From assembly GCA_002269645.1 (NCBI GenBank), contig NIVC01002110.1, forward strand, positions 62,001-126,000: a DNA stretch of 64,000 bases, given 5' to 3'. The notes under the pieces were generated by a model. It searched no databases. It saw only the letters and a program-made list of their open reading frames with translations, and was not told the origin of the DNA. Source of the stretch: Macrostomum lignano. Lineage: Eukaryota. This document shows positions 26,015 to 44,445 of the stretch, piece after piece (position 1 is the first letter of the stretch; the number at the start of each line of letters is the position of its first letter). Position numbers and translations under genes: made by a program.

Positions 26015-26573
26015 NNNNNNNNNNNNNNNNNNNNNNNNNNNNNNNNNNNNNNNNNNNNNNNNNNNNNNNNNNNNNNNNNNNNNNNNNNNNNNNNNNNNNN
26101 NNNNNNNNNNNNNNNNNNNNNNNNNNNNNNNNNNNNNNNNNNNNNNNNNNNNNNNNNNNNNNNNNNNNNNNNNNNNNNNNNNNNNNNNNNNNNNNNNNNN
26201 NNNNNNNNNNNNNNNNNNNNNNNNNNNNNNNNNNNNNNNNNNNNNNNNNNNNNNNNNNNNNNNNNNNNNNNNNNNNNNNNNNNNNNNNNNNNNNNNNNNN
26301 NNNNNNNNNNNNNNNNNNNNNNNNNNNNNNNNNNNNNNNNNNNNNNNNNNNNNNNNNNNNNNNNNNNNNNNNNNNNNNNNNNNNNNNNNNNNNNNNNNNN
26401 NNNNNNNNNNNNNNNNNNNNNNNNNNNNNNNNNNNNNNNNNNNNNNNNNNNNNNNNNNNNNNNNNNNNNNNNNNNNNNNNNNNNNNNNNNNNNNNNNNNN
26501 NNNNNNNNNNNNNNNNNNNNNNNNNNNNNNNNNNNNNNNNNNNNNNNNNNNNNNNNNNNNNNNNNNNNNNNNN
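26015..26573. other. Assembly gap (N run)
   Basis: Run of N inside the (GA)n tract. Confidence 1.
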
Positions 26574-35995: not shown

Positions 35996-37109
35996 GTTTA
36001 TATATTCCATTGCTCCATTGATTAAATGTAAAATCAAAACCAAGCTTTTTAGTTTTTAGTTTTTACTTTTTAATTACATTTTGGAAGAATTTCTCTCTAT
36101 TAATTTCATTTGTTTTCTTTCATTAGGCCTTAGCTATTAATTTTTGTTCAAATTTTCATAGATAATTGTTTAGTTGCTCTTTCAAATATTATTTTAATAT
36201 TTTTTATACAAAACTTGTCCTTATAATAATAGCCTCCTCTTGAATTATTATTAAATTACATCAAACTATATTAGCTAAACAGGCTTTTTGCCTGAGCCAA
36301 ACTTACTACTATTACTACTACTACAACTACTACTACTACTAACCATATAAATAGTAAAATGGTTATTTTTATAGGCCTTGTAATTTGTAAAGCAAATATT
36401 ATCTAAATTAGGTAATAAACCTTATTAGTCTTAGTATAAAAAAAAAGACATTATTTAAATATATATATATTTAATTTTAATAATAATGGTAAAATATTTG
36501 ATATAAAAATTTTCCTACAGCTACATAGCTTATAGCTACTATTATATTAATTTATAGTTTCTTCATTTATTATAATAGACATTATCATTGCTATACAATT
36601 TTATAGCATTGTCTAAATCATAGAATAATCTAAATATGTAAGACTGATTATATGCAACACAACCTTATTTCATTAAATGCCAATAGCCTAAACTGTTTAT
36701 CTTTGAGTTGTAAAAATATAGTTGCTATGGTTAGAAAGAGAATAACAAGTTTAATGTCTCCAAGCTCTTTCTCTAAGAAATCAAGTTTTTCCATTTTTAA
36801 AGCAGTTAATGCTAGTCAATCTATGGTATCTACCAATAAATATTTTAGAATCAAATGCTTATAGACCAATGGGGTTCTTAGATTATATGGATTAGCTCAA
36901 AATCATCCTTTAAACCTCTATTGGTTGCTGCACTATTGTTTTCTCCCATTACTATTATATCATTCTCTTTAGATATGTTAAATATAAACATAAGTTCTTA
37001 AAACTATCTTCATGTGTAGTGTATTTTTTTGAGAATAAACCTGGCATATTTATAACTTGAACTTGAATAACTTTCTATAAACATATTTGGAACTTCCATA
37101 TAGCCATCT

Positions 37110-37730
37110 TTAGCTCCCCATAGATATCTTTAGTTTCCCATAGACATCTGTAGCTTTTCATAGATATCTATAGCTTCCCATAGACATCTATAGCTTTCCA
37201 TAGACATCTGTAGCTCCCCATGGGTATCTATAGCTTCCCATAGATATCTATAGCTCCCCATAGATATCTTTAGCTCCCTATAAACATCTATAGCTTCCCA
37301 TAGACAGCTGTAGCTCCCCATAGACATCTATAGCTTTCCATAGATATCTGTAGCTCCCTATAGACATCTATAGCTTTCCATAGACATCTATAGCTTCCCA
37401 TAGATATCTGTAGCTCCCTATAGACATCTATAGCTTTCCATAGACATCTATAGCTTCCCATAGATATCTTTAGCTCCCTATAGACATCTATAGCTTCCCA
37501 TAGATATCTGTAGCTCCCTATAGACATCTATAGCTTTCCATAGACATCTATAGCTCCCCATAGATATATTTAGCTCACTATAGACATCTATAGCTTCCCG
37601 TAGATATCTTTAGCTCCCTATAGACATTTATAGCTTTCCATAGACATCTATAGATCCCCATGGATATATTTAGCTCCCCATAGACATCTGTGGCTTACCA
37701 TAGACATCTGTAGCTTCCCATAGACATACT
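37110..37730. repeat. 20-bp minisatellite (CATAGACATCTATAGCTTCC), ~30 copies with a 60-bp sub-period
   Basis: Read directly; ends about 175 bp upstream of the SNX ATG. Confidence 0.96.
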
Positions 37731-37904: not shown

Positions 37905-40900
37905 ATGGAAAAATCTAGCGACAACTCCGAGGACGACATCTTTGCCGAGACCAATGAAACTGTTGATGTTGAAGATGTCGATTTGAACAGCAGTGGAGCT
38001 GGCGTCTCAACCCCAGCTGCCACCGCCGCCCCAGCTCCGGCCGCTGAAAAGTTGGAGCCTTCGGCACCTCCCGCCGTCGCCTCGGCACCTCCCGCCGCCG
38101 CCTCGGCACCTCCCGCCGCTGCCTCGGCACCTGCCGCTCCACCAGCTTCAAATTCCAGCTCCGGTGGCCCTAGCAAACTCGAATTGCCGGCCTCGCTAGC
38201 TTTCGAATATCTGCTCACTGTTCGAGTCACTAATCCGGAGAAAATTGGCGATGGAATGGGAGCCTACGTGGCCTACAAGGTGTCGTTCTCCACCACTATA
38301 CCGGCTTTCGGCCGGCCCGAGGGCAGCGTACGGCGAAGGTTCTCCGACTTTCTCGGTTTGTATGAAAAACTGCACGAGAAGTATTTGAGGTAAATTCCTC
38401 TTTTGTCCTGGGCCAGCCTCCCGGATGATCCCAGATCCTCAATTGCTGGACCAGCCTCCCAGATCCTCAATTGCTGGGCCAGCCTCTCAGATCCTCAGTT
38501 GCTGGGCCAGCCTCCCAAATCCTCAGTTGCTGGGCCAGCCTCCCAGATCCTCAGTTTCTGGGCCAGCCTCCCAGATCCTCAGCTGTTGGGCCAGCCTCCC
38601 AGATCCTCAGTTGCTGGGCCAGCCTCCCAGATCCTCAGTTGCTGGGCCAGCCTCTCAGATCCTCAGTTGCTGGGCCAGCCTCCCCGATTCTCAGTTGCTG
38701 GGCCAGCCTCCCAGATCCTCAGTTGCTCGGCTAGCCTCCCAGATCCTCAGCTGTTGGGCCAGCCTCCCAGATCCTCAGTTGCTGGGCCAGCCTCCCAGAT
38801 CCTCAGTTGCTGGGCCAGCCTCTCAGATCCTCAGTTGCTGGGCCAGCCTCCCCGATTCTCAGTTGCTGGGCCAGCCTCCCAGATGATCCCAGATTCTCAG
38901 TTGCTGTGCCAGCCTCCCAGATGATCCCAGATCCTCAGCTGTTGGGCCAGCCTCCCAGATCCTCAGCTGTTGGGCCAGCCTCCCAGATCCTCAGTTGCTG
39001 GGCCAGCCTTAACCAGAGCCGTCTCCCTCAATCATGGCCGATCCCAGGGACGGTTTTGTAATTCCGCCCAAGCCGGAGAAGTCCGTAGTCGGCGCCACGA
39101 AGATCAAGATGTCCAAGGACAGCGTAGACGAGGACCATTTTGTTGAGCGCCGCCGGGCCCAGCTGGAGCGCTTCCTGGTCCGCTGCTCCGACCACCCGGT
39201 GTTGCGGATGGACCCGGATTTCCGCGAATTTCTCGAGCACGACGGCGACCTGCCCAAGTCCAGCGGCACCCGGGCGCTGAGCGGAGCCGGCGTCATGCGT
39301 GTGTTCTCGTCCATTGGCAGCTCGGTGCAACGGATGACCTACAAGATGGACGAGACTGATCAGGTGCGCCTCGATGGGGTTGTTAATTAGTTTCGAGATA
39401 AACCAATAGTATTTGGTCTATGAACTGCTCATTTTCTTCTTTCTGAGCTTCTGAGGATTGAATTAATCTTATATGTCGGCGTGAAATAAAAGATCACAAA
39501 AATCGATTTATTTTTAACCGCCCCCCTCTCTTTCCTCCCTCCACACTTTATTCTTAATATGAATTTTGTCTATGGTTAGAAGCCCCCACACCCCCAGCAG
39601 GGGCTCTGCCCCCGCACCCCCGCTAGCAGCCGCTGTCGAATAGATGGAATACTCTTCAAAAATAATCAGTGAAGGGGGAGAATGGCTCTAATAAGAATGA
39701 AATTCATGAACGCTTACTCGTGCGTCTATGGCAGTCGTGCAGGAATGAAATAATCTATGGCCAAATCTCCACTGTTTTACACATGGACTTCGTGCAGGAA
39801 TGAAATAATCTATGGCCAAATCTCCACTGTTTTACACATGGACTTCGTGCAGGAATGAAATAATCTATGGCCAAATCTCCACTGTTTTACACATGGACTT
39901 CGTGCAGGAATGAAATAATCTATGGCCAAATCTCCACTGTTTTACACATGGACTTCGTGCAGGAATGACACTCTCCGTTCCTGCACGCAAACAATTTATT
40001 TATATGTATTTGATTATTTAGTTGTATTTATTCAATAACCTTAACAAAACTTAACATGAAAAAGACTAATTAGGATTGCAAATATATAAACTGCACCAAA
40101 TAAGACAGCAAGCAAAAATGTAGGGGGGGGGGGGGCTCAACAGCAAAAATGTTGTGTTCGGCAACAAATTAAGGAGTCACACAACCTTACTCAAAAAAGA
40201 ATTCCACTACGTTGCTGGAACCGTTGGCTACTATCCTCATCTTCTTAGCCGGACCGGCAATTCGCAAATCGCAGGCGCCACTCGAAAATTGTTTGGCCGG
40301 TGCCTCAGTTGCGGTTGGATGTTTGTCGCTACAGCCTCCCAGTGCTGGTGGCGCACGACCGGCGAGAGACTCAGTCAGCTGGCTGCTCATCTTGGCAAGA
40401 ATGCTGTCTCTCTTTTTTCCCTGTCTGATGTACCGCTCCACTGAGGCGCTCGCCTGTTTCAAATATTTAAGAAGGATGCAAGAGAGAGTATATAGAAAAA
40501 ATCTTTTAAAGCATTTAATTGTGCGGCTTAAGATAGACAAGAAAATACAGAAATAGCACGTAGAAATTACCTTGTGTCCAGTCACCTTGGCGATAGTCTC
40601 TGTCGAATATCCAGCTTCGTGGAGCTCAGTGACTACAGTGAGTCGAACACAGTGCGCCGTATAGCTTCTCGACAGCCCGGCACTGGAAGATATCCGCTTA
40701 AGCATTGGTCCAAGCGTATTGATTCCGATTGCCTGTTTCGTATACCACAGGCCATTCGAGCCAACCAGCTGCTTCGGTCGCAGAAAAAAGTCCGAACTGT
40801 TCCATCCAGGCACTGCTTCGATCTTCCGCAAATACATGCGAAAGGCTTCAACGGGACACGATTTCTGATCGGACCCGGCCACCATGATTTCTTGCTTTGG

Positions 40901-43900
40901 GTCGTCGCTCTGCCTCAAATCCGTTGATCCATGGACAGTTTTACTGGTTCCAACTTGAAGCACGATGGCCACTCGTCTCTCAGCCAGACGCTTCTCAGAA
41001 AACGACTTTGCAGTCAGTCCTCTGAGCCATTCGCGGCCCCGGTTACCAAAATAATATAGAATACTGAAATACACTTCATCCTGAAGTTTGGTTGGACTGC
41101 TCCGATCGAAGTAGGTGTGCAGTTTAGACAGGTCGTCTGTTTCAATGGCGGAGAAATGATTGATTCTTCCTCCAATACGCAGGAATTCGTTACAGGCATG
41201 TTTCAATGTCAGATTGGCCGAATGGAATTGCGGCAGAGAGATAATGTCCAAAGAGCGAAGCCTTATAAAGTGCCGATAAAGTCCGGCACGCATTCCCAAC
41301 ATTGTGTTGGGTGAATAGGATGAGCCGTCAGGCTTCTTCAGAGCGGCGTAAAAATACGCTCGTAACGAAGAAATTTCGCAAGCTGCTCAGGAGTCACGGT
41401 CTCAAAGTCAAGGTGAATGTTGTTCTCCCGCAAAAAATCTTGAAACCGAAGACACGAAGCTTTCTCCTTGGCAACGCTTGACTCGCACTGATTTTCTCGT
41501 TCCAGCTTAGCGGCCAAGCTTTCAAGTTCATCGATGTTGCACAAAGAATTCGGATCCACAGACATCAGTTCGTCCAAAACTTTGCTTGTAACTCCTTCTT
41601 GCGAACAAGTGAGCTTGGCGATCTCCCGTTCGAATTTGCTGCTTACCGACTCGATAAACGTCTCCTCGGCGGACAATCCACAAACAGTCGCATACTGCAT
41701 GTCGATTAGTGGAGCCGCCAAGTTTGAATTTATTACACTCGCCATTTTTAAAAGCACGAACTTAAAAAGCATTTCTAGAGCTTAACTTCTTCTTCCCAGT
41801 CTAATTTCTTGCGTGCAGGAATGTGTGTTCTTTCTAAGAGTCATTATTGATGGTTCACTTTCCAAGAATCCTTATTAATGGTTCACTTTCCAAGAATCCT
41901 TATTGATGGTCTACTTTCTAAGAATCAGTATTGAGGGCTTACTTTCTAAGAATCATTATTGATGGTTTACTTTCTAAGAATCATTATTGATGGTCTACTT
42001 TCTAAGAAAGAATCATCCGCAATCTTTTCGAAGAAATCGTCAAAAAATCACCCACATTCTCTTTCCAAAGAATTGAATGTCCTTTCAATTTCAAAGAATC
42101 AGTACTGCTTTCTAATTAGACTTGTAAAATTCCCTAGCTAACCCACTCCAACCGGCCCTCCCCCCAACCAGTGGTTCGAAGACAAGAACCAGGAGGTGCA
42201 CCAGCTAGAAGAGCATCTGCGCCGGTTGCACAGCAGCATTGAGGCCCTAGTCAACCACCGGCGGGAGTACGGCTGCATGGCGGAGCAGTTCGCCGGCTCT
42301 GCTAATATGATTTCTAGCGTTGAAGAGAACACTAATCTGTCGTTTGCGTTCACTAAACTGGCGGAGACTGAGGAGCGAGTCGGCAGGCTGCAGATCGAAC
42401 AGGCTGATTCGGACTATTACGGATTAGCCGAATTGCTGCATGACCATTTGGCCATGCTTGAGTCTGTTCGAGCCAGCCTGTACGAACGAGTTCGAGCCTA
42501 TAAAACTTGGAAAGACGCCGAAATGGCGTTGACTAAGAAACGCGAAGAGAAAGTGCGGAATGAACTTGGCGGCAAGGCTGACAAAGCGGCCGCTTGCGAG
42601 GCTGCTACTAGAGAATTGGAAGGCCAGGTGTGTTTTTGGGAGCTAGTAACAAATTTTAGAGCAGTGGTAAGGACTGGTTTTAGTTGTAGATTTTGAAGAG
42701 AGAAGGTAGGATGTTGAGAGAGTAGGTAGATAGATTGTGACGGAAGTAGGTAGTGTTGAGGATAAGGTAGAGTGAAAAGAGCAGGTAGAGTGTGAAGAGA
42801 GTAGGTAGTGTAAAGCGAGTAGGTAGAGAGTGAAGAGAGCAGGTAGAGAGTAAAAAGAGTAGGTATAGAGTGAAGAGAGTAGGTAGTGTGAAGAGAGCAG
42901 GTAGAGAGTGAAGAGAGCAGGTAGAGAGTGAAGAGGGTAGGTAGTGTGAAGAGAGCAGGTAGAGAGTGAAGAGGGTAGGTAGTGTGAAGAGAGCAGGTAG
43001 AGAGTGAAGAGGGTAGGTAGTGTGAAGAGAGCAGGTAGAGAGTGAAGAGGGTAGGTAGTGTGAAGAGAGTAGGTAGTGTGAAGAGAGCAGGTAGAGAGTG
43101 AAGAGGGTAGGTAGTGTGAAGAGAGCAGGTAGAGAGTGAAGAGGGTAGGTAGTGTGAAGAGAGCAGGTAGAGAGTGAAGAGGGTAGGTAGAGAGTGAAGA
43201 GAGCAGGTAGAGAGTGAAGAGGGTAGGTAGAGAGTGAAGAGAGCAGGTAGAGAGTGAAGAGAGCAGGTAGAGAGTGAAGAGAGCAGGTAGAGAGTGAAGA
43301 GAGCAGGTAGAGAGTGAAGAGAGCAGGTAGAGAGTGAAGAGAGCAGGTAGAGAGTGAAGAGAGCAGGTAGAGAGTGAAGAGAGCAGGTAGAGACTGAAGA
43401 GAGCAGGTAGAGAGTGAAGAGAGCAGGTAGAGAGTGAAGAGAGCAGGTAGAGAGTGAAGAGAGCAGGTAGAGAGTGAAGAGAGCAGGTATAGAGTGAAGA
43501 GAGCAGGTAGAGAGTGAAGAGAGCAGGTAGAGACTGAAGAGAGCAGGTAGAGAGTGAAGAGAGCAGGTAGAGACTGAAGAGAGCAGGTAGAGACTGAAGA
43601 GAGCAGGTAGAGACTGAAGAGAGCAGGTAGAGACTGAAGAGAGCAGGTAGAGGTGAATGGGATTAGAATAGGGAACGACAAATGTACTTACGTTCACCAA
43701 CCCAGCCATCAATGCCCCTCTAAATATGGTTAAGGTGGAACGCGGCCAAGAGGCATTTGACAAGATCTCTGCCACGGTGCGTAGCGAACTTGAGCGCTAC
43801 GATCTCCGGCGTGGCTACGAGCTGAAGACGGCAATCGTGGCGAGTCTGGAGCACCAGCTGCGGCAGCAGCAGTGCGTACTGGAGGCCTGGGAGGCCTACC

Positions 43901-43932
43901 TACCCGAGGCTAAACGGATTCTAGCCGCTTAA
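37905..43932 (+). CDS. SNX1/2: Sorting nexin 1/2 (PX-BAR, Vps5 family), 484 aa; exons 37905-38389, 39048-39363, 42172-42627, 43735-43932
   Basis: PX motifs [61 protein letters not shown]; BAR segment WFEDK...LVNHRREY...KLAETEE...WEAYLPEAK. All introns are GT-AG with consistent phases; total 1455 nt. Confidence 0.96.
38406..39009. repeat. 28-bp minisatellite filling SNX intron 1
   Basis: Unit CTGGGCCAGCCTCCCAGATCCTCAGTTG, ~21 copies. Confidence 0.97.
39736..39967. repeat. 55-bp tandem repeat (4 full copies plus a partial) carrying the CGTGCAGGAATG arm
   Basis: Copies start at 39736, 39791, 39846, 39901 and 39956. Confidence 0.97.
39976..41823 (-). mobile_element. Crypton-like tyrosine-recombinase DNA transposon inside SNX intron 2
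   Basis: YR gene on the minus strand between inverted 15-bp arms CGTTCCTGCACGCAA (39976-39990) and TTGCGTGCAGGAATG (41809-41823), one mismatch. The ends are inferred from these arms. Confidence 0.8.
40187..41745 (-). CDS. Tyrosine recombinase, CryptonA/DUF3504(KCTD1/ZMYM)-like, ~478 aa; one intron (40454-40570) and one frameshift near 41360
   Basis: ATG at 41745. LAKFLR/[frameshift]/[30 protein letters not shown]; catalytic set GNRGRE (R), SKT (K), HCVR (HxxR), TGHK (H), ERY (Y); [10 protein letters not shown] and [15 protein letters not shown] motifs; intron GHK|gtaatt...aacag|ASASVERY. Confidence 0.9.
41840..42005. repeat. 28-bp minisatellite abutting the right end of the Crypton-like element
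   Basis: Unit TCATTATTGATGGTTCACTTTCCAAGAA with variants, ~6 copies. Confidence 0.9.
42700..43651. repeat. 20-bp purine-rich minisatellite filling SNX intron 3
   Basis: Unit GAGCAGGTAGAGAGTGAAGA; 38-bp (20+18) higher-order block in the 5' half. Confidence 0.97.
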
Positions 43933-44078: not shown

Positions 44079-44445
44079 ATTTTCCAAGCCAATTGAGCCC
44101 TAGGAAGCAAGCAATTTAATCCCTAGTTGGGAGAATCAGGCTATTGTAGGCTGGCTTTTCATTGTCTATGGCCCAACTGGGGGTCTGTGGCGCAAATAAT
44201 TCCTTAGTTTGGTCCTTAGAATCAGGCTATTGTAGATTGGCTTTTTATTGTCTATGGTCCAACCTGGTCCTTAGAATGAAGCTATTGTAGACTGGCATTT
44301 CATTGTCTATGGTCCAAGCTGGTCCTTAGAATGAAGCTATTGTAGACTGGCTTTTCATTGTCTATGGTCCCACCTGGTCTTTAGAATGAAGCTATAGAGA
44401 TTTAAATTCAATCTGTCCCCTAGGGGTCAAATTGGCTTGGAAAAT
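44079..44445. mobile_element. MITE-like element with an internal 55-bp tandem repeat
   Basis: Inverted ends ATTTTCCAAGCCAATT / AATTGGCTTGGAAAAT, extending imperfectly to CCCTAGG; interior 55-bp repeat ~4 copies; no TSD seen. Confidence 0.6.

What the first reader, a model, noticed from the sequence alone, without database searches (positions are those of the whole stretch)
39956..39987. loxP/FRT-like 12-8-12 site at the end of the YR element
Seen: CGTGCAGGAATG-ACACTCTC-CGTTCCTGCACG, i.e. two inverted 12-bp arms (one mismatch) around an asymmetric 8-bp spacer. The same arm closes the other end of the element (41812-41823), followed by a different 8-mer (TGTGTTCT) and no partner arm. Established: Cre, Flp and Xer sites are inverted binding arms around a 6-8-bp crossover spacer. 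Inference: this is the recombination site of the encoded YR, resembling a circle-junction or att site. If real, it would define a eukaryotic site-specific recombinase/target pair.
Basis: partly seen in the sequence, partly recalled or inferred. Interest (0 to 1): 0.82.

Follow-up and report, generated by a model that had tools for sequence, protein, structure and literature searches.

The report
Recombinase-binding repeats inside a Crypton transposon
The 12-8-12 palindrome is real, but it is an internal pair of a 12-bp motif that recurs through a Crypton-type (tyrosine-recombinase) transposon lodged in an intron. Related flatworm elements keep the same motif yet join host DNA beside other copies of it, so the motif is probably the recombinase's binding site, while this palindrome is neither the element's end nor its crossover site.

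Summary
The sequence is as described: CGTGCAGGAATG-ACACTCTC-CGTTCCTGCACG at 39956-39987, and the same 12-mer at 41812-41823. The left arm also begins every unit of a perfect 55-bp tandem array (39735-39968). The element also runs about 400 bp further left, to about 39559.

The gene between the arms is a DUF3504-type tyrosine recombinase, so this is an animal-type (CryptonA-like) Crypton. It carries a frameshift and lies in an intron of a sorting-nexin gene.

Macrostomum lignano homologues (53-56% protein identity) carry the same 12-mer in the same layout, including a perfect 12-4-12 pair just after the poly(A) signal. More distant relatives carry their own CATT... variants.

Eight independent M. 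lignano insertions define the real ends. The element ends in AATG, the 5' flank ends in A-N-T-G, there is no target duplication, and the junction lies next to a different arm copy, never at the palindrome. The window copy follows the same rule at 41820-41823.

A second, recently active M. lignano family has no inverted partner arm. The spacer is 8 bp here and 4 bp in the first family.

Verdict: the arms are very probably the recombinase's binding sites. The palindrome is an internal arm pair, not the att site or circle junction. It is a new member of a known kind, and its cis-architecture had not been described.

The parts
39559..39575 (-). Inferred left end of the element. It is the left half of a split composite site: CCATAGACAAAATTCAT on the gene strand. 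The + strand reads ATG|AATTTTGTCTATGG, and the ATG at 39559-39561 repeats the ATG at 41821-41823.
   Evidence: The intact homologous site reads CCATAGACAAAATCATTCCTGCACG in L003, CCATAGACAAAATCAATCTTGCACG in L002/L011 and CCATAGACAAAGTCATTCCTGCACG in L001. The window matches through CCATAGACAAAAT and then diverges.
39576..39640 (-). G-rich conserved non-coding segment of the element (...GCTGCTAGCGGGGGTGCGGGGGCAGAGCCCC...).
   Evidence: About 93% identical to a segment at the same relative position in M. lignano L011 and L016, and absent from L002. Unique in the window.
39690..39731 (-). Remnant of the conserved palindromic 'block'. It holds CCATAGACGCACGAGT (39716-39731) and a degenerate inverted arm (39702-39713, GCGTTCATGAAT on the gene strand).
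   Evidence: A 16/16 match to L001 and L002. In those elements this block lies upstream of the gene, so the window copy is circularly permuted relative to them.
39735..39968 (-). 55-bp tandem array (4.3 identical units). On the gene strand each unit is arm CATTCCTGCACG + 30 nt + CCATAGA + 6 nt, so the array is an amplified D2-D3 module of the element.
   Evidence: The D2-to-D3 spacing is 54 bp in L001, 55 bp in L002 and 55 bp here.
39956..39987 (.). The reported 12-8-12 site. It is an internal inverted pair of arms: D2' at 39956-39967, spacer at 39968-39975, and D1' at 39976-39987 with one mismatch. It lies 7 nt after the poly(A) signal.
   Evidence: The homologous pair in M. lignano family 1 is a perfect 12-4-12 in all 6 sequenced loci (5 independent insertions).
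39995..40000 (-). AATAAA poly(A) signal of the recombinase gene.
   Evidence: AATAAATTGTT is conserved between the window and L001. AATAAA also directly precedes arm D2 in L002, L011 and L016.
40187..41754 (-). Tyrosine recombinase gene (DUF3504 + Phage_integrase). It has a 117-nt intron at 40454-40570 after the GHK motif and a frameshift within 41362-41377.
41812..41823 (+). Terminal arm CGTGCAGGAATG, the right half of the split composite site. Its last four bases, AATG (41820-41823), are the junction tetranucleotide. Host DNA starts at 41824 (TGTGTTCT...).
   Evidence: All 8 M. lignano insertions also end in AATG.
39364..42165 (+). Host intron of a sorting-nexin-1/2-like gene that contains the whole element. 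The flanking exons end at 39363 and start at 42166.
   Evidence: Residues 205/206 of the 88%-identical protein P0025 are contiguous across this gap.

Best explanation
The site is an internal pair of recombinase-binding arms in a roughly 2.27-kb CryptonA-type DNA transposon. The element spans window 39559-41823, with its gene on the minus strand, and lies in an intron of a sorting-nexin gene.

**The cis region.** The element's non-coding DNA carries many copies of a 12-bp arm, CATTCCTGCACG. On the gene strand they are arranged as follows:
- One arm lies about 60-70 nt upstream of the ATG (U3).
- An inverted pair lies right after the poly(A) signal (D1/D2). This is the reported site.
- Further direct copies follow, each preceded by a CCATAGA(C) box. 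In this copy the 55-bp D2-D3 module has been amplified into a tandem array.

**Inferred mechanism.**
- The encoded tyrosine recombinase binds these arms.
- The element moves through a circular form, following the Goodwin model for Cryptons.
- Strand exchange with the target happens at a short AATG / N-N-T-G match next to one particular arm. No target-site duplication is made.
- In the two M. lignano families that arm is U1, at the 5' end.
- In the window copy it is U3. That is why U3 is split between the two ends, and why the window copy is circularly permuted relative to the M. lignano copies.

**Role of the palindrome.** The D1/D2 pair is most likely a dimer-binding or accessory site within this multi-arm region. 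It is not the crossover site. In this frameshifted copy it also has a non-canonical geometry.

**Shown:** sequence anatomy, conservation, and junction positions. **Inferred:** protein binding, the circular intermediate, and the cleavage position.
For: 1. **The gene is a Crypton-type recombinase.** Pfam reports DUF3504 at 38.2 bits (cut-off 29.7) and Phage_integrase at 28.5 bits (cut-off 27.1). The R..K..HxxR..H..Y positions are conserved in alignment A1. There is no room for a reverse transcriptase, because host exons flank the element.

2. **The arm is conserved beside homologous genes.**
- The closest homologues are M. lignano P0001 (56% identity) and P0002 (53%).
- The identical 12-mer lies beside these genes and beside the metagenomic homologue L003 (50% identity), in the same positions.
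- The D2-to-D3 spacing is 54-55 bp in all three families.

3. **More distant homologues carry related arms.**
- L005: CATT[A/G]CGGCACG.
- L012: CATTAC[T/G]GGACG.
- L013: CATTACGGCCCG, as a 12-6-12 pair.
- L014: CATT[G/A]CGGACCG.

This fits a binding site that evolves together with its protein.

4. **No unlinked copies were found.** None occurs in the rest of the window or in the M. lignano flanks.

5. **The ends are defined by multi-copy comparison.**
- Family 1 (5 independent insertions, >99% identical): flank-A[A/T/C]TG|TAATATTCCTGCACG ... CATTCCTGCACGCTGTGGTCAAACGACAATG|flank.
- Family 2 (3 insertions): flank-A[A/T]TG|TTAGGATTCTTGAACG ... AAGAATG|flank.
- L008 sits in a tandem repeat whose neighbouring unit shows the empty target, ggggATTGtacactcg.

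6. **The window follows the same rule on its + strand:** TTAAT-ATG|AATTTTGTCTATGG ... CGTGCAGGAATG|TGTGTTC.

7. **The window copy is permuted.** The region left of the array is homologous to the region upstream of the gene in family 2 (alignment A2; blastn E = 9e-22).
Against: - No biochemical evidence exists. Binding of the arms by the recombinase is inferred from linkage and conservation only.
- The window holds a single, frameshifted copy. No second copy from the same genome and no empty-site allele could be obtained.
- The left boundary (39559-39561) therefore rests on homology to elements of another species.
- The window junction lies on the opposite strand, and on the other side of the composite site, compared with the M. 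lignano junctions. The unifying AATG rule is therefore an interpretation.
- The function of the D1/D2 pair remains a guess. If cleavage is AA^TG, the family-1 pair has a canonical 10-8-10 geometry, so a real core-site role for it cannot be excluded.
- The source species was not identified.
Confidence: 0.7

Rival explanations
1. One reading: the 12-8-12 palindrome is itself the lox/FRT-like crossover site (att site or circle junction) of the recombinase, and it marks the element's end.
For: - The geometry resembles loxP and FRT: 12-bp inverted arms around an asymmetric 8-bp spacer.
- An inverted pair at the same position is perfectly conserved in all 6 sequenced family-1 loci (5 independent insertions).
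- If cleavage is AA^TG, as the junctions suggest, the family-1 pair is a canonical 10-8-10 site.
- Inverted arm pairs also occur in the distant relatives L012 and L013.
Against: - None of 9 insertion junctions maps to this pair.
- The element continues about 400 bp beyond it.
- The spacer is 8 bp here and 4 bp in family 1.
- The partner arm is absent from family 2, which has three 99%-identical copies with intact ORFs at different loci.
- In the long family-1 variant, inverted arm pairs have spacers of 1, 4 and 9 bp.
- With AA^TG cleavage the window version would have a 12-bp overlap, and its TG is mutated to CG.
Confidence: 0.12
2. The arms are transcriptional or 3'-end-formation signals of the element (a promoter-proximal site plus a hairpin at the poly(A) site), bound by host factors or acting as RNA/DNA structure. 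They are not recombination sites.
For: - The pair lies 7-9 nt after AATAAA in the window and in family 1, and arm D2 directly follows AATAAA in family 2.
- U3 lies about 60-85 nt upstream of the ATG in the window, L001 and L003.
- The pair can form a stable hairpin: -11.5 kcal/mol (z = -4.5) in the window and -16 kcal/mol (z = -8.1) in L001.
Against: - Element/host junctions abut arm copies in three families.
- Most arms (D3, D4, U1, and the extra ones in L006/L007) lie outside the transcription unit.
- The arm sequence changes together with the recombinase lineage.
- No Rfam family matches the region.
Confidence: 0.1
3. The palindrome is a chance inverted repeat, or a by-product of minisatellite turnover in a genome rich in tandem repeats.
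For: - Inverted repeats of this quality are not rare: 1.9 expected and 6 loci observed in the window.
- The window has 58 tandem-repeat rows.
- The left arm belongs to a perfect 55-bp array.
Against: - The same arm, and an inverted pair at the same position, occur in M. lignano elements whose proteins are only 56% identical.
- The 55-bp period equals the conserved D2-D3 spacing of those elements.
Confidence: 0.03

Closest known systems
Animal Cryptons (CryptonA group; Kojima & Jurka 2011, PMC3212892) and their fungal relatives, the Glomhoppers (PMC13465315)
   Same: - A single ORF encodes a DUF3504-type tyrosine recombinase, with no reverse transcriptase or DDE transposase.
- The element is small (about 2 kb).
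- It has no long terminal repeats and makes no target-site duplication.
   Different: [quoted passage not shown] - Here a conserved, iterated 12-bp arm, a CCATAGAC box and a palindromic block are seen across several lineages.
- Placement within CryptonA by phylogeny was not tested.
CryptonF elements and the Goodwin model of Crypton transposition (CryptonF-1_cRei in Chlamydomonas, PMC9977147)
   Same: - Insertion goes through a short sequence shared by one element terminus and the target: CACCG/CAYCG there, AATG/A-N-T-G here.
- The short direct repeats reflect microhomology, not duplication.
   Different: - It is a different Crypton group, with a GCR1_C-type C-terminal domain in fungal CryptonF.
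- The match is only 2-4 bp here, against 5-6 bp there.
- No iterated arm motifs have been reported for CryptonF.
Cre/loxP and Flp/FRT
   Same: - Inverted 12-13-bp arms surround a short asymmetric spacer.
- FRT also has a third, direct arm copy, as D1-D2-D3 does here (own knowledge).
   Different: - The crossover does not map to this pair.
- The spacer length is not conserved (8, 4, or no partner arm).
- Many more arm copies are spread over 0.3-0.6 kb.
attP-type complex sites of phage and ICE integrases (lambda Int; Tn916 and CTnDOT integrases, which tolerate heterology in the overlap) - own knowledge
   Same: - Multiple recombinase sites lie on both sides of the crossover point in the circular form.
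- Integration occurs into targets that share only about 2 bp next to the cleavage site.
   Different: - This is a eukaryotic element.
- The arm next to the crossover has the same sequence as the distal arms, so no separate core-type and arm-type classes have been shown.
- No accessory proteins are known.

Membership tests
Crypton (CryptonA-type) DNA transposon | Encodes a tyrosine recombinase and no reverse transcriptase or DDE transposase | tested here: met
   The only long ORFs between the host exons are the two halves of the recombinase. Host exons at 39363 and 42166 bound the locus.
Crypton (CryptonA-type) DNA transposon | Recombinase domain of the DUF3504 type with the catalytic R-K-H-R-H-Y positions | tested here: met
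   PF12012 scores 38.2 bits against a cut-off of 29.7, and PF00589 scores 28.5 against 27.1. The positions are conserved in alignment A1. This copy has a frameshift at 41362-41377.
Crypton (CryptonA-type) DNA transposon | No long TIR or LTR; the ends share only a few bp with the target; no target-site duplication | tested here: met
   Eight M. lignano insertions have A-N-T-G at the 5' flank and AATG at the 3' end, and L008 shows an empty site. In the window the ATG/AATG repeat is inferred by homology.
Crypton (CryptonA-type) DNA transposon | Multiple dispersed copies (mobility) | tested here: inconclusive
   Met for the M. lignano relatives: 14 and 4 cluster members on different contigs. There is only one copy in the window, and the source genome was not available.
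Crypton (CryptonA-type) DNA transposon | Phylogenetic placement inside the CryptonA clade | not tested
   No reference CryptonA protein sequences were on hand. The only support is the DUF3504 hit and a weak QRICH1 match.
lox/FRT-type minimal core site | Two inverted 11-13-bp arms | tested here: met
   12-bp arms with one mismatch.
lox/FRT-type minimal core site | A 6-8-bp spacer of fixed length for a given recombinase lineage | tested here: not met
   8 bp in the window, 4 bp in family 1, and no partner arm in family 2.
lox/FRT-type minimal core site | Strand exchange inside the spacer, so that junctions map there | tested here: not met
   All 9 junctions map elsewhere.
lox/FRT-type minimal core site | Bound and recombined by the cognate recombinase | not testable with these tools
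   Needs EMSA and recombination assays.
attP-type complex recombination region | Several recombinase sites on both sides of the crossover point | tested here: met
   In the inferred family-1 circle, D1-D4 lie on one side and U1-U3 on the other. There are 7 to 14 arms per copy.
attP-type complex recombination region | Distinct core-type and arm-type sequences read by different protein domains | tested here: inconclusive
   One arm sequence is used throughout. The CCATAGA(C) box 5-6 nt from several arms could be a second motif.
DIRS/Ngaro YR retrotransposons | RT/RNase H ORF and split or inverted long terminal repeats | tested here: not met
   No such ORF is present, and the locus is bounded by host exons.

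The most novel reading that the evidence does not exclude
The perfect inverted arm pair of the intact M. lignano family would be a 10-8-10 site with overlap TGAAGTCA, if cleavage is AA^TG. On this reading it is a true minimal lox-like site that the Crypton recombinase recombines on its own, which would give an animal-native Cre/lox-like recombinase-target pair. The same arm-to-arm recombination would then also generate tandem arrays such as the 55-bp array in this window.
Probability: 0.15. Interest if true: 0.75.

Novelty: new member of a known kind. Interest (0 to 1): 0.5.

Why it matters
Cryptons are the least understood class of eukaryotic DNA transposons. For the animal group no terminal repeats, binding site or crossover site has been defined (PMC3212892). 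That group also gave rise to the DUF3504 domains of ZMYM2-4, QRICH1 and KCTD1.

This analysis supplies four things:
- A concrete candidate binding motif, CATTCCTGCACG, with lineage-specific variants.
- A conserved multi-arm architecture.
- Base-precise junctions (AATG / A-N-T-G, with no target duplication).
- Apparently intact source copies in M. lignano.

Together they make binding, cleavage-site mapping and excision/integration assays directly designable. The specific claim that the 12-8-12 palindrome is the att site does not hold.

Tried and rejected
1. **Treating the 19-nt inverted repeat (39978-39996 and 41803-41821) as the element's TIRs.** Rejected, because homology to related elements runs 400 bp beyond the left one.

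2. **MITE or unlinked-motif hypothesis.** Rejected. There are no other copies in the window or in the M. lignano flanks.

3. **DIRS/Ngaro.** Rejected. No reverse transcriptase is present, and host exons bound the locus.

4. **Empty-site test through paralogues or orthologues of the sorting-nexin gene.** The best database hit is an unnamed 88%-identical protein on a 1.8-kb Logan contig, with no genomic paralogue. The test was therefore not possible, and the source species stays unidentified.

5. **Profile-based protein search.** It returned the same 7 proteins as the single-sequence search.

6. **Viral-contig scan for the composite motif.** 0 hits.

7. **Rfam scan of the region.** 0 hits.

8. 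**First chance simulation.** Invalid, because a run of N (26015-26573) matched itself. It was replaced.

9. **A 6-8-bp heteroduplex overlap model.** It would predict that both edge types appear among junctions of one family. All 8 M. lignano junctions lie at the same edge, so the overlap is either very short, or only one strand pair is exchanged. This remains unresolved.
Full report
**Observation**

The sequence at 39956-39987 reads CGTGCAGGAATG ACACTCTC CGTTCCTGCACG. The same 12-mer occurs at 41812-41823, followed by TGTGTTCT. With at most one mismatch the 12-mer occurs seven times between 39736 and 41823, and nowhere else in the 64 kb.

Five of those copies, including the left arm of the palindrome, are the first 12 nt of successive units of a 100%-identical 55-bp tandem array at 39735-39968.

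A palindrome of this quality is not unusual in itself. With local-composition shuffles, 0.145 such repeats are expected at a spacer of exactly 8, and 1.9 at any spacer from 0 to 12. Six loci of that quality exist in the window. An earlier simulation was spoiled by a run of N and is discarded. The significance therefore has to come from recurrence and from comparison with relatives.

**What the element is**

- The minus strand between the arms encodes a protein with Pfam DUF3504 (38.2 bits, cut-off 29.7) and Phage_integrase (28.5 bits, cut-off 27.1). There is a weak match to the QRICH1 DUF3504 structure.
- The reading frame has a frameshift within 41362-41377. It also has a 117-nt intron at 40454-40570, directly after the GHK motif and before SASVERY. 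The intron position is shared with M. lignano family 1.
- The R, K, HxxR, H and Y positions are conserved in the alignment with homologues.
- The locus sits in a 2.8-kb intron (39364-42165) of a sorting-nexin-1/2-like gene on the + strand. Residues 205/206 of an 88%-identical protein are contiguous across the gap. There is therefore no room for a reverse transcriptase.
- This is the anatomy of an animal-type Crypton (PMC3212892).

**Relatives**

The closest proteins are from Macrostomum lignano: P0001 at 56% identity and P0002 at 53%. Three metagenome or Logan proteins follow at 35-50%. A profile search added nothing.

I fetched six loci of the P0001 family (family 1) and three of the P0002 family (family 2), using cluster members on different contigs. 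I also fetched four more distant loci from metagenomes.

**The arm is conserved and linked to the recombinase**

Family 1 carries the identical 12-mer CATTCCTGCACG. On the gene strand its layout is:
- U1 (TATTCCTGCACG) at the 5' end.
- A palindromic block.
- U2, a degenerate inverted arm.
- CCATAGAC-N5-U3, about 75 nt before the ATG.
- The gene and AATAAA.
- D1/D2, which reads CGTGCAGGAATG-AAGT-CATTCCTGCACG.
- 29 nt, then CCATAGAC-N5-D3.
- 18 nt, then D4.

Other lineages compare as follows:
- The metagenomic homologue L003 (50% identity) has CCATAGACAAAATCATTCCTGCACG upstream of its ATG.
- Family 2 has the variants CAATCCTGCACG, CAATTCTGCACG and CAATCTTGCACG at the equivalent positions.
- More distant homologues carry related but distinct arms: L005 has CATT[A/G]CGGCACG, L012 has CATTAC[T/G]GGACG, L013 has CATTACGGCCCG as a 12-6-12 pair, and L014 has CATT[G/A]CGGACCG.

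No exact arm lies in the roughly 48 kb of M. lignano flanking DNA held, or in the rest of the window.

- The reverse complement of each 55-bp unit contains CCATAGA-N6-CATTCCTGCACG. This is the composite site seen at D3 and U3 of the relatives.
- The 55-bp period equals the D2-to-D3 spacing of family 1 (54 bp) and family 2 (55 bp). The array is therefore an amplified internal module, not flanking DNA.
- Left of the array, window 39545-39750 (reverse complement) aligns with the region that lies upstream of the gene in family 2. The aligned parts are CCATAGACGCACGAGT (16/16), a degenerate inverted arm, CATTCTTATT, a 56-nt G-rich segment about 93% identical to L011, and finally TAACCATAGACAAAAT (alignment A2; blastn E = 9e-22).
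- At that point the relatives continue with the U3 arm, whereas the window continues with unrelated DNA (...TTCAT|ATTAAGAAT).
- The missing half of U3, (CAT)TCCTGCACG, is the arm at 41812-41823, at the other end.

The window copy is thus one unit length of the element, opened at U3. It spans 39559-41823, about 2.27 kb. The palindrome lies about 400 bp inside it.

**Where recombination really happens**

Five independent family-1 insertions (>99% identical) have these ends:
- 5' end: flank-AATG, ATTG, ATTG, ACTG or AATG, then |TAATATTCCTGCACG...
- 3' end: ...CATTCCTGCACGCTGTGGTCAAACGACAATG|flank.

Three family-2 insertions have these ends:
- 5' end: flank-ATTG, AATG or AATG, then |TTAGGATTCTTGAACG...
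- 3' end: ...CAAATAAGAATG|flank.

L008 lies in a host tandem repeat. The neighbouring unit shows the uninterrupted target, ggggATTGtacactcg, so no target duplication is made.

This is the Crypton pattern of a short sequence shared by one terminus and the target (PMC3212892; PMC9977147, which reports CACCG/CAYCG for CryptonF-1_cRei).

On its + strand the window obeys the same rule: TTCTTAAT-ATG|AATTTTGTCTATGG ... CGTGCAGGAATG|TGTGTTC. Here the terminal AATG is the last four bases of the arm at 41812-41823. In none of these nine cases does a junction fall in the D1/D2 pair.

**The palindrome itself**

- Its position is conserved between the window and family 1: 7-9 nt after AATAAA. In family 1 it is a perfect 12-4-12 in all six sequenced loci.
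- The spacer differs, at 8 bp against 4 bp.
- Family 2 has no inverted partner at all, yet it has three 99%-identical copies with intact ORFs at different loci.
- The long variant of family 1 (L006/L007) has extra inverted arm pairs with spacers of 1 and 9 bp.

The junction data fit cleavage at AA^TG: TG is invariant, while the two bases before it come from the target at the 5' junction and from the element at the 3' junction. On that inference the geometries are:

| Site | Arms and overlap | Overlap length |
|---|---|---|
| Family-1 D1/D2 pair | CGTGCAGGAA / TGAAGTCA / TTCCTGCACG | 8 bp |
| Family-1 circle junction | CAAACGACAA / TGTAATA / TTCCTGCACG | 7 bp |
| Family-2 circle junction | AAGAA / TGTTAGGA / TTCTTGAACG | 8 bp |
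| Window D1'/D2' pair | 10-nt arms, with one TG changed to CG | 12 bp |

So the window version is the least canonical of the set. A core-site role for the family-1 pair still cannot be excluded.

The pair can fold as a hairpin, at -11.5 kcal/mol in the window and -16 kcal/mol in L001. No Rfam family matches the region.

**Mechanism proposed**

Shown:
- The anatomy, the conservation and the junction positions.

Inferred:
- The recombinase binds the 12-bp arms.
- The roughly 0.3-0.6-kb multi-arm non-coding region of a circular intermediate assembles the recombination complex.
- Exchange occurs at AATG next to one arm, with only about 2-4 bp matched in the target.
- Recombination or unequal exchange between direct arms explains three things: the variable arm number among near-identical copies, the 55-bp array, and the permuted window copy.
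- D1/D2 is most likely a dimer-binding or accessory site.

**Comparison with the literature**

Kojima & Jurka state that no terminal repeats were found in animal Cryptons. [quoted passage not shown] Searches of the held library found no description of Cryptons in Macrostomum, or of CryptonA binding sites.

The element is a new member of a known kind. The conserved arm architecture and the precise junctions appear to be undescribed, and they are testable.

**Verdict**

- It is half wrong: the palindrome is not the element's end, att site or circle junction.
- Interest is moderate, at 0.5.

Noticed in passing
L001 3786-3892; also L012 12-130 and L013 about 300-400: The 5'-terminal roughly 100 nt of M. 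lignano family 1 (U1-block-U2) is a near-perfect long palindrome: DNA hairpin -41 kcal/mol, z = -10.8. Its centre, GCGCG-AA-GCGC, recurs as GCGCGTTAGCGC inside long palindromes upstream of the 32-38%-identical relatives L012 and L013. The window keeps only its distal half (39690-39731).
   Followed up: partly
window 39576-39640; L011 2900-2960; L016 about 1330-1390: A G-rich 56-nt non-coding segment is about 93% identical between the window element and M. lignano family 2, although the proteins are only 53% identical. It is present in L011 and L016 and absent from L002. It showed no significant fold as single-stranded DNA (z = 0.15).
   Followed up: partly
window 37100-37727, 44210-44395 and elsewhere; L001 and L002 flanks: The heptamer CCATAGA occurs 40 times in the window and 9 times in each of L001 and L002, against about 1 per 8 kb expected. 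It occurs inside unrelated minisatellites, one of which (44210-44395) also has a 55-bp period. In L002 a CCATAGA abuts the 5' junction. A link between this box, Crypton targeting and minisatellites is possible.
   Followed up: no
L006/L007 2491-2890: A long variant of family 1 has about 390 extra nt upstream, with at least 8 further arms in both orientations. These include a 12-1-12 pair and a 12-9-12 pair. Other copies that are >99% identical elsewhere have short blocks, which suggests arm-mediated or repeat-mediated deletions.
   Followed up: partly
window 38169-43929 (+): The host gene is a sorting nexin 1/2 homologue, with exons at about 38169-38504, 38953-39363, 42166-42630 and 43732-43929. 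The best database match is an unnamed 88%-identical Logan protein (P0025). No M. lignano orthologue was returned, so the source species is probably a relative of Macrostomum but remains unidentified.
   Followed up: partly
whole window: The window is extremely rich in mini- and microsatellites: 58 TRF rows with score of at least 100, including kb-long (GA)n, (AGAT)n and (ACTA)n tracts. It also has a run of 559 N at 26015-26573, which is an assembly gap.
   Followed up: no
window 41830-42008: A 28-bp tandem array (6.4 copies) starts 7 nt outside the right end of the element. The last roughly 20 nt of the left flank (39540-39558) show a faint resemblance to its unit, so the element may have inserted into or beside this array.
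   Followed up: no
L001, L006 target flanks: The 5' target flanks of several family-1 insertions resemble the element's own 3'-terminal AAACGACAATG at 6-8 of 11 positions (for example TAAAAACAATG and AACGGACATTG). This hints at target choice by similarity to the left half-site.
   Followed up: no
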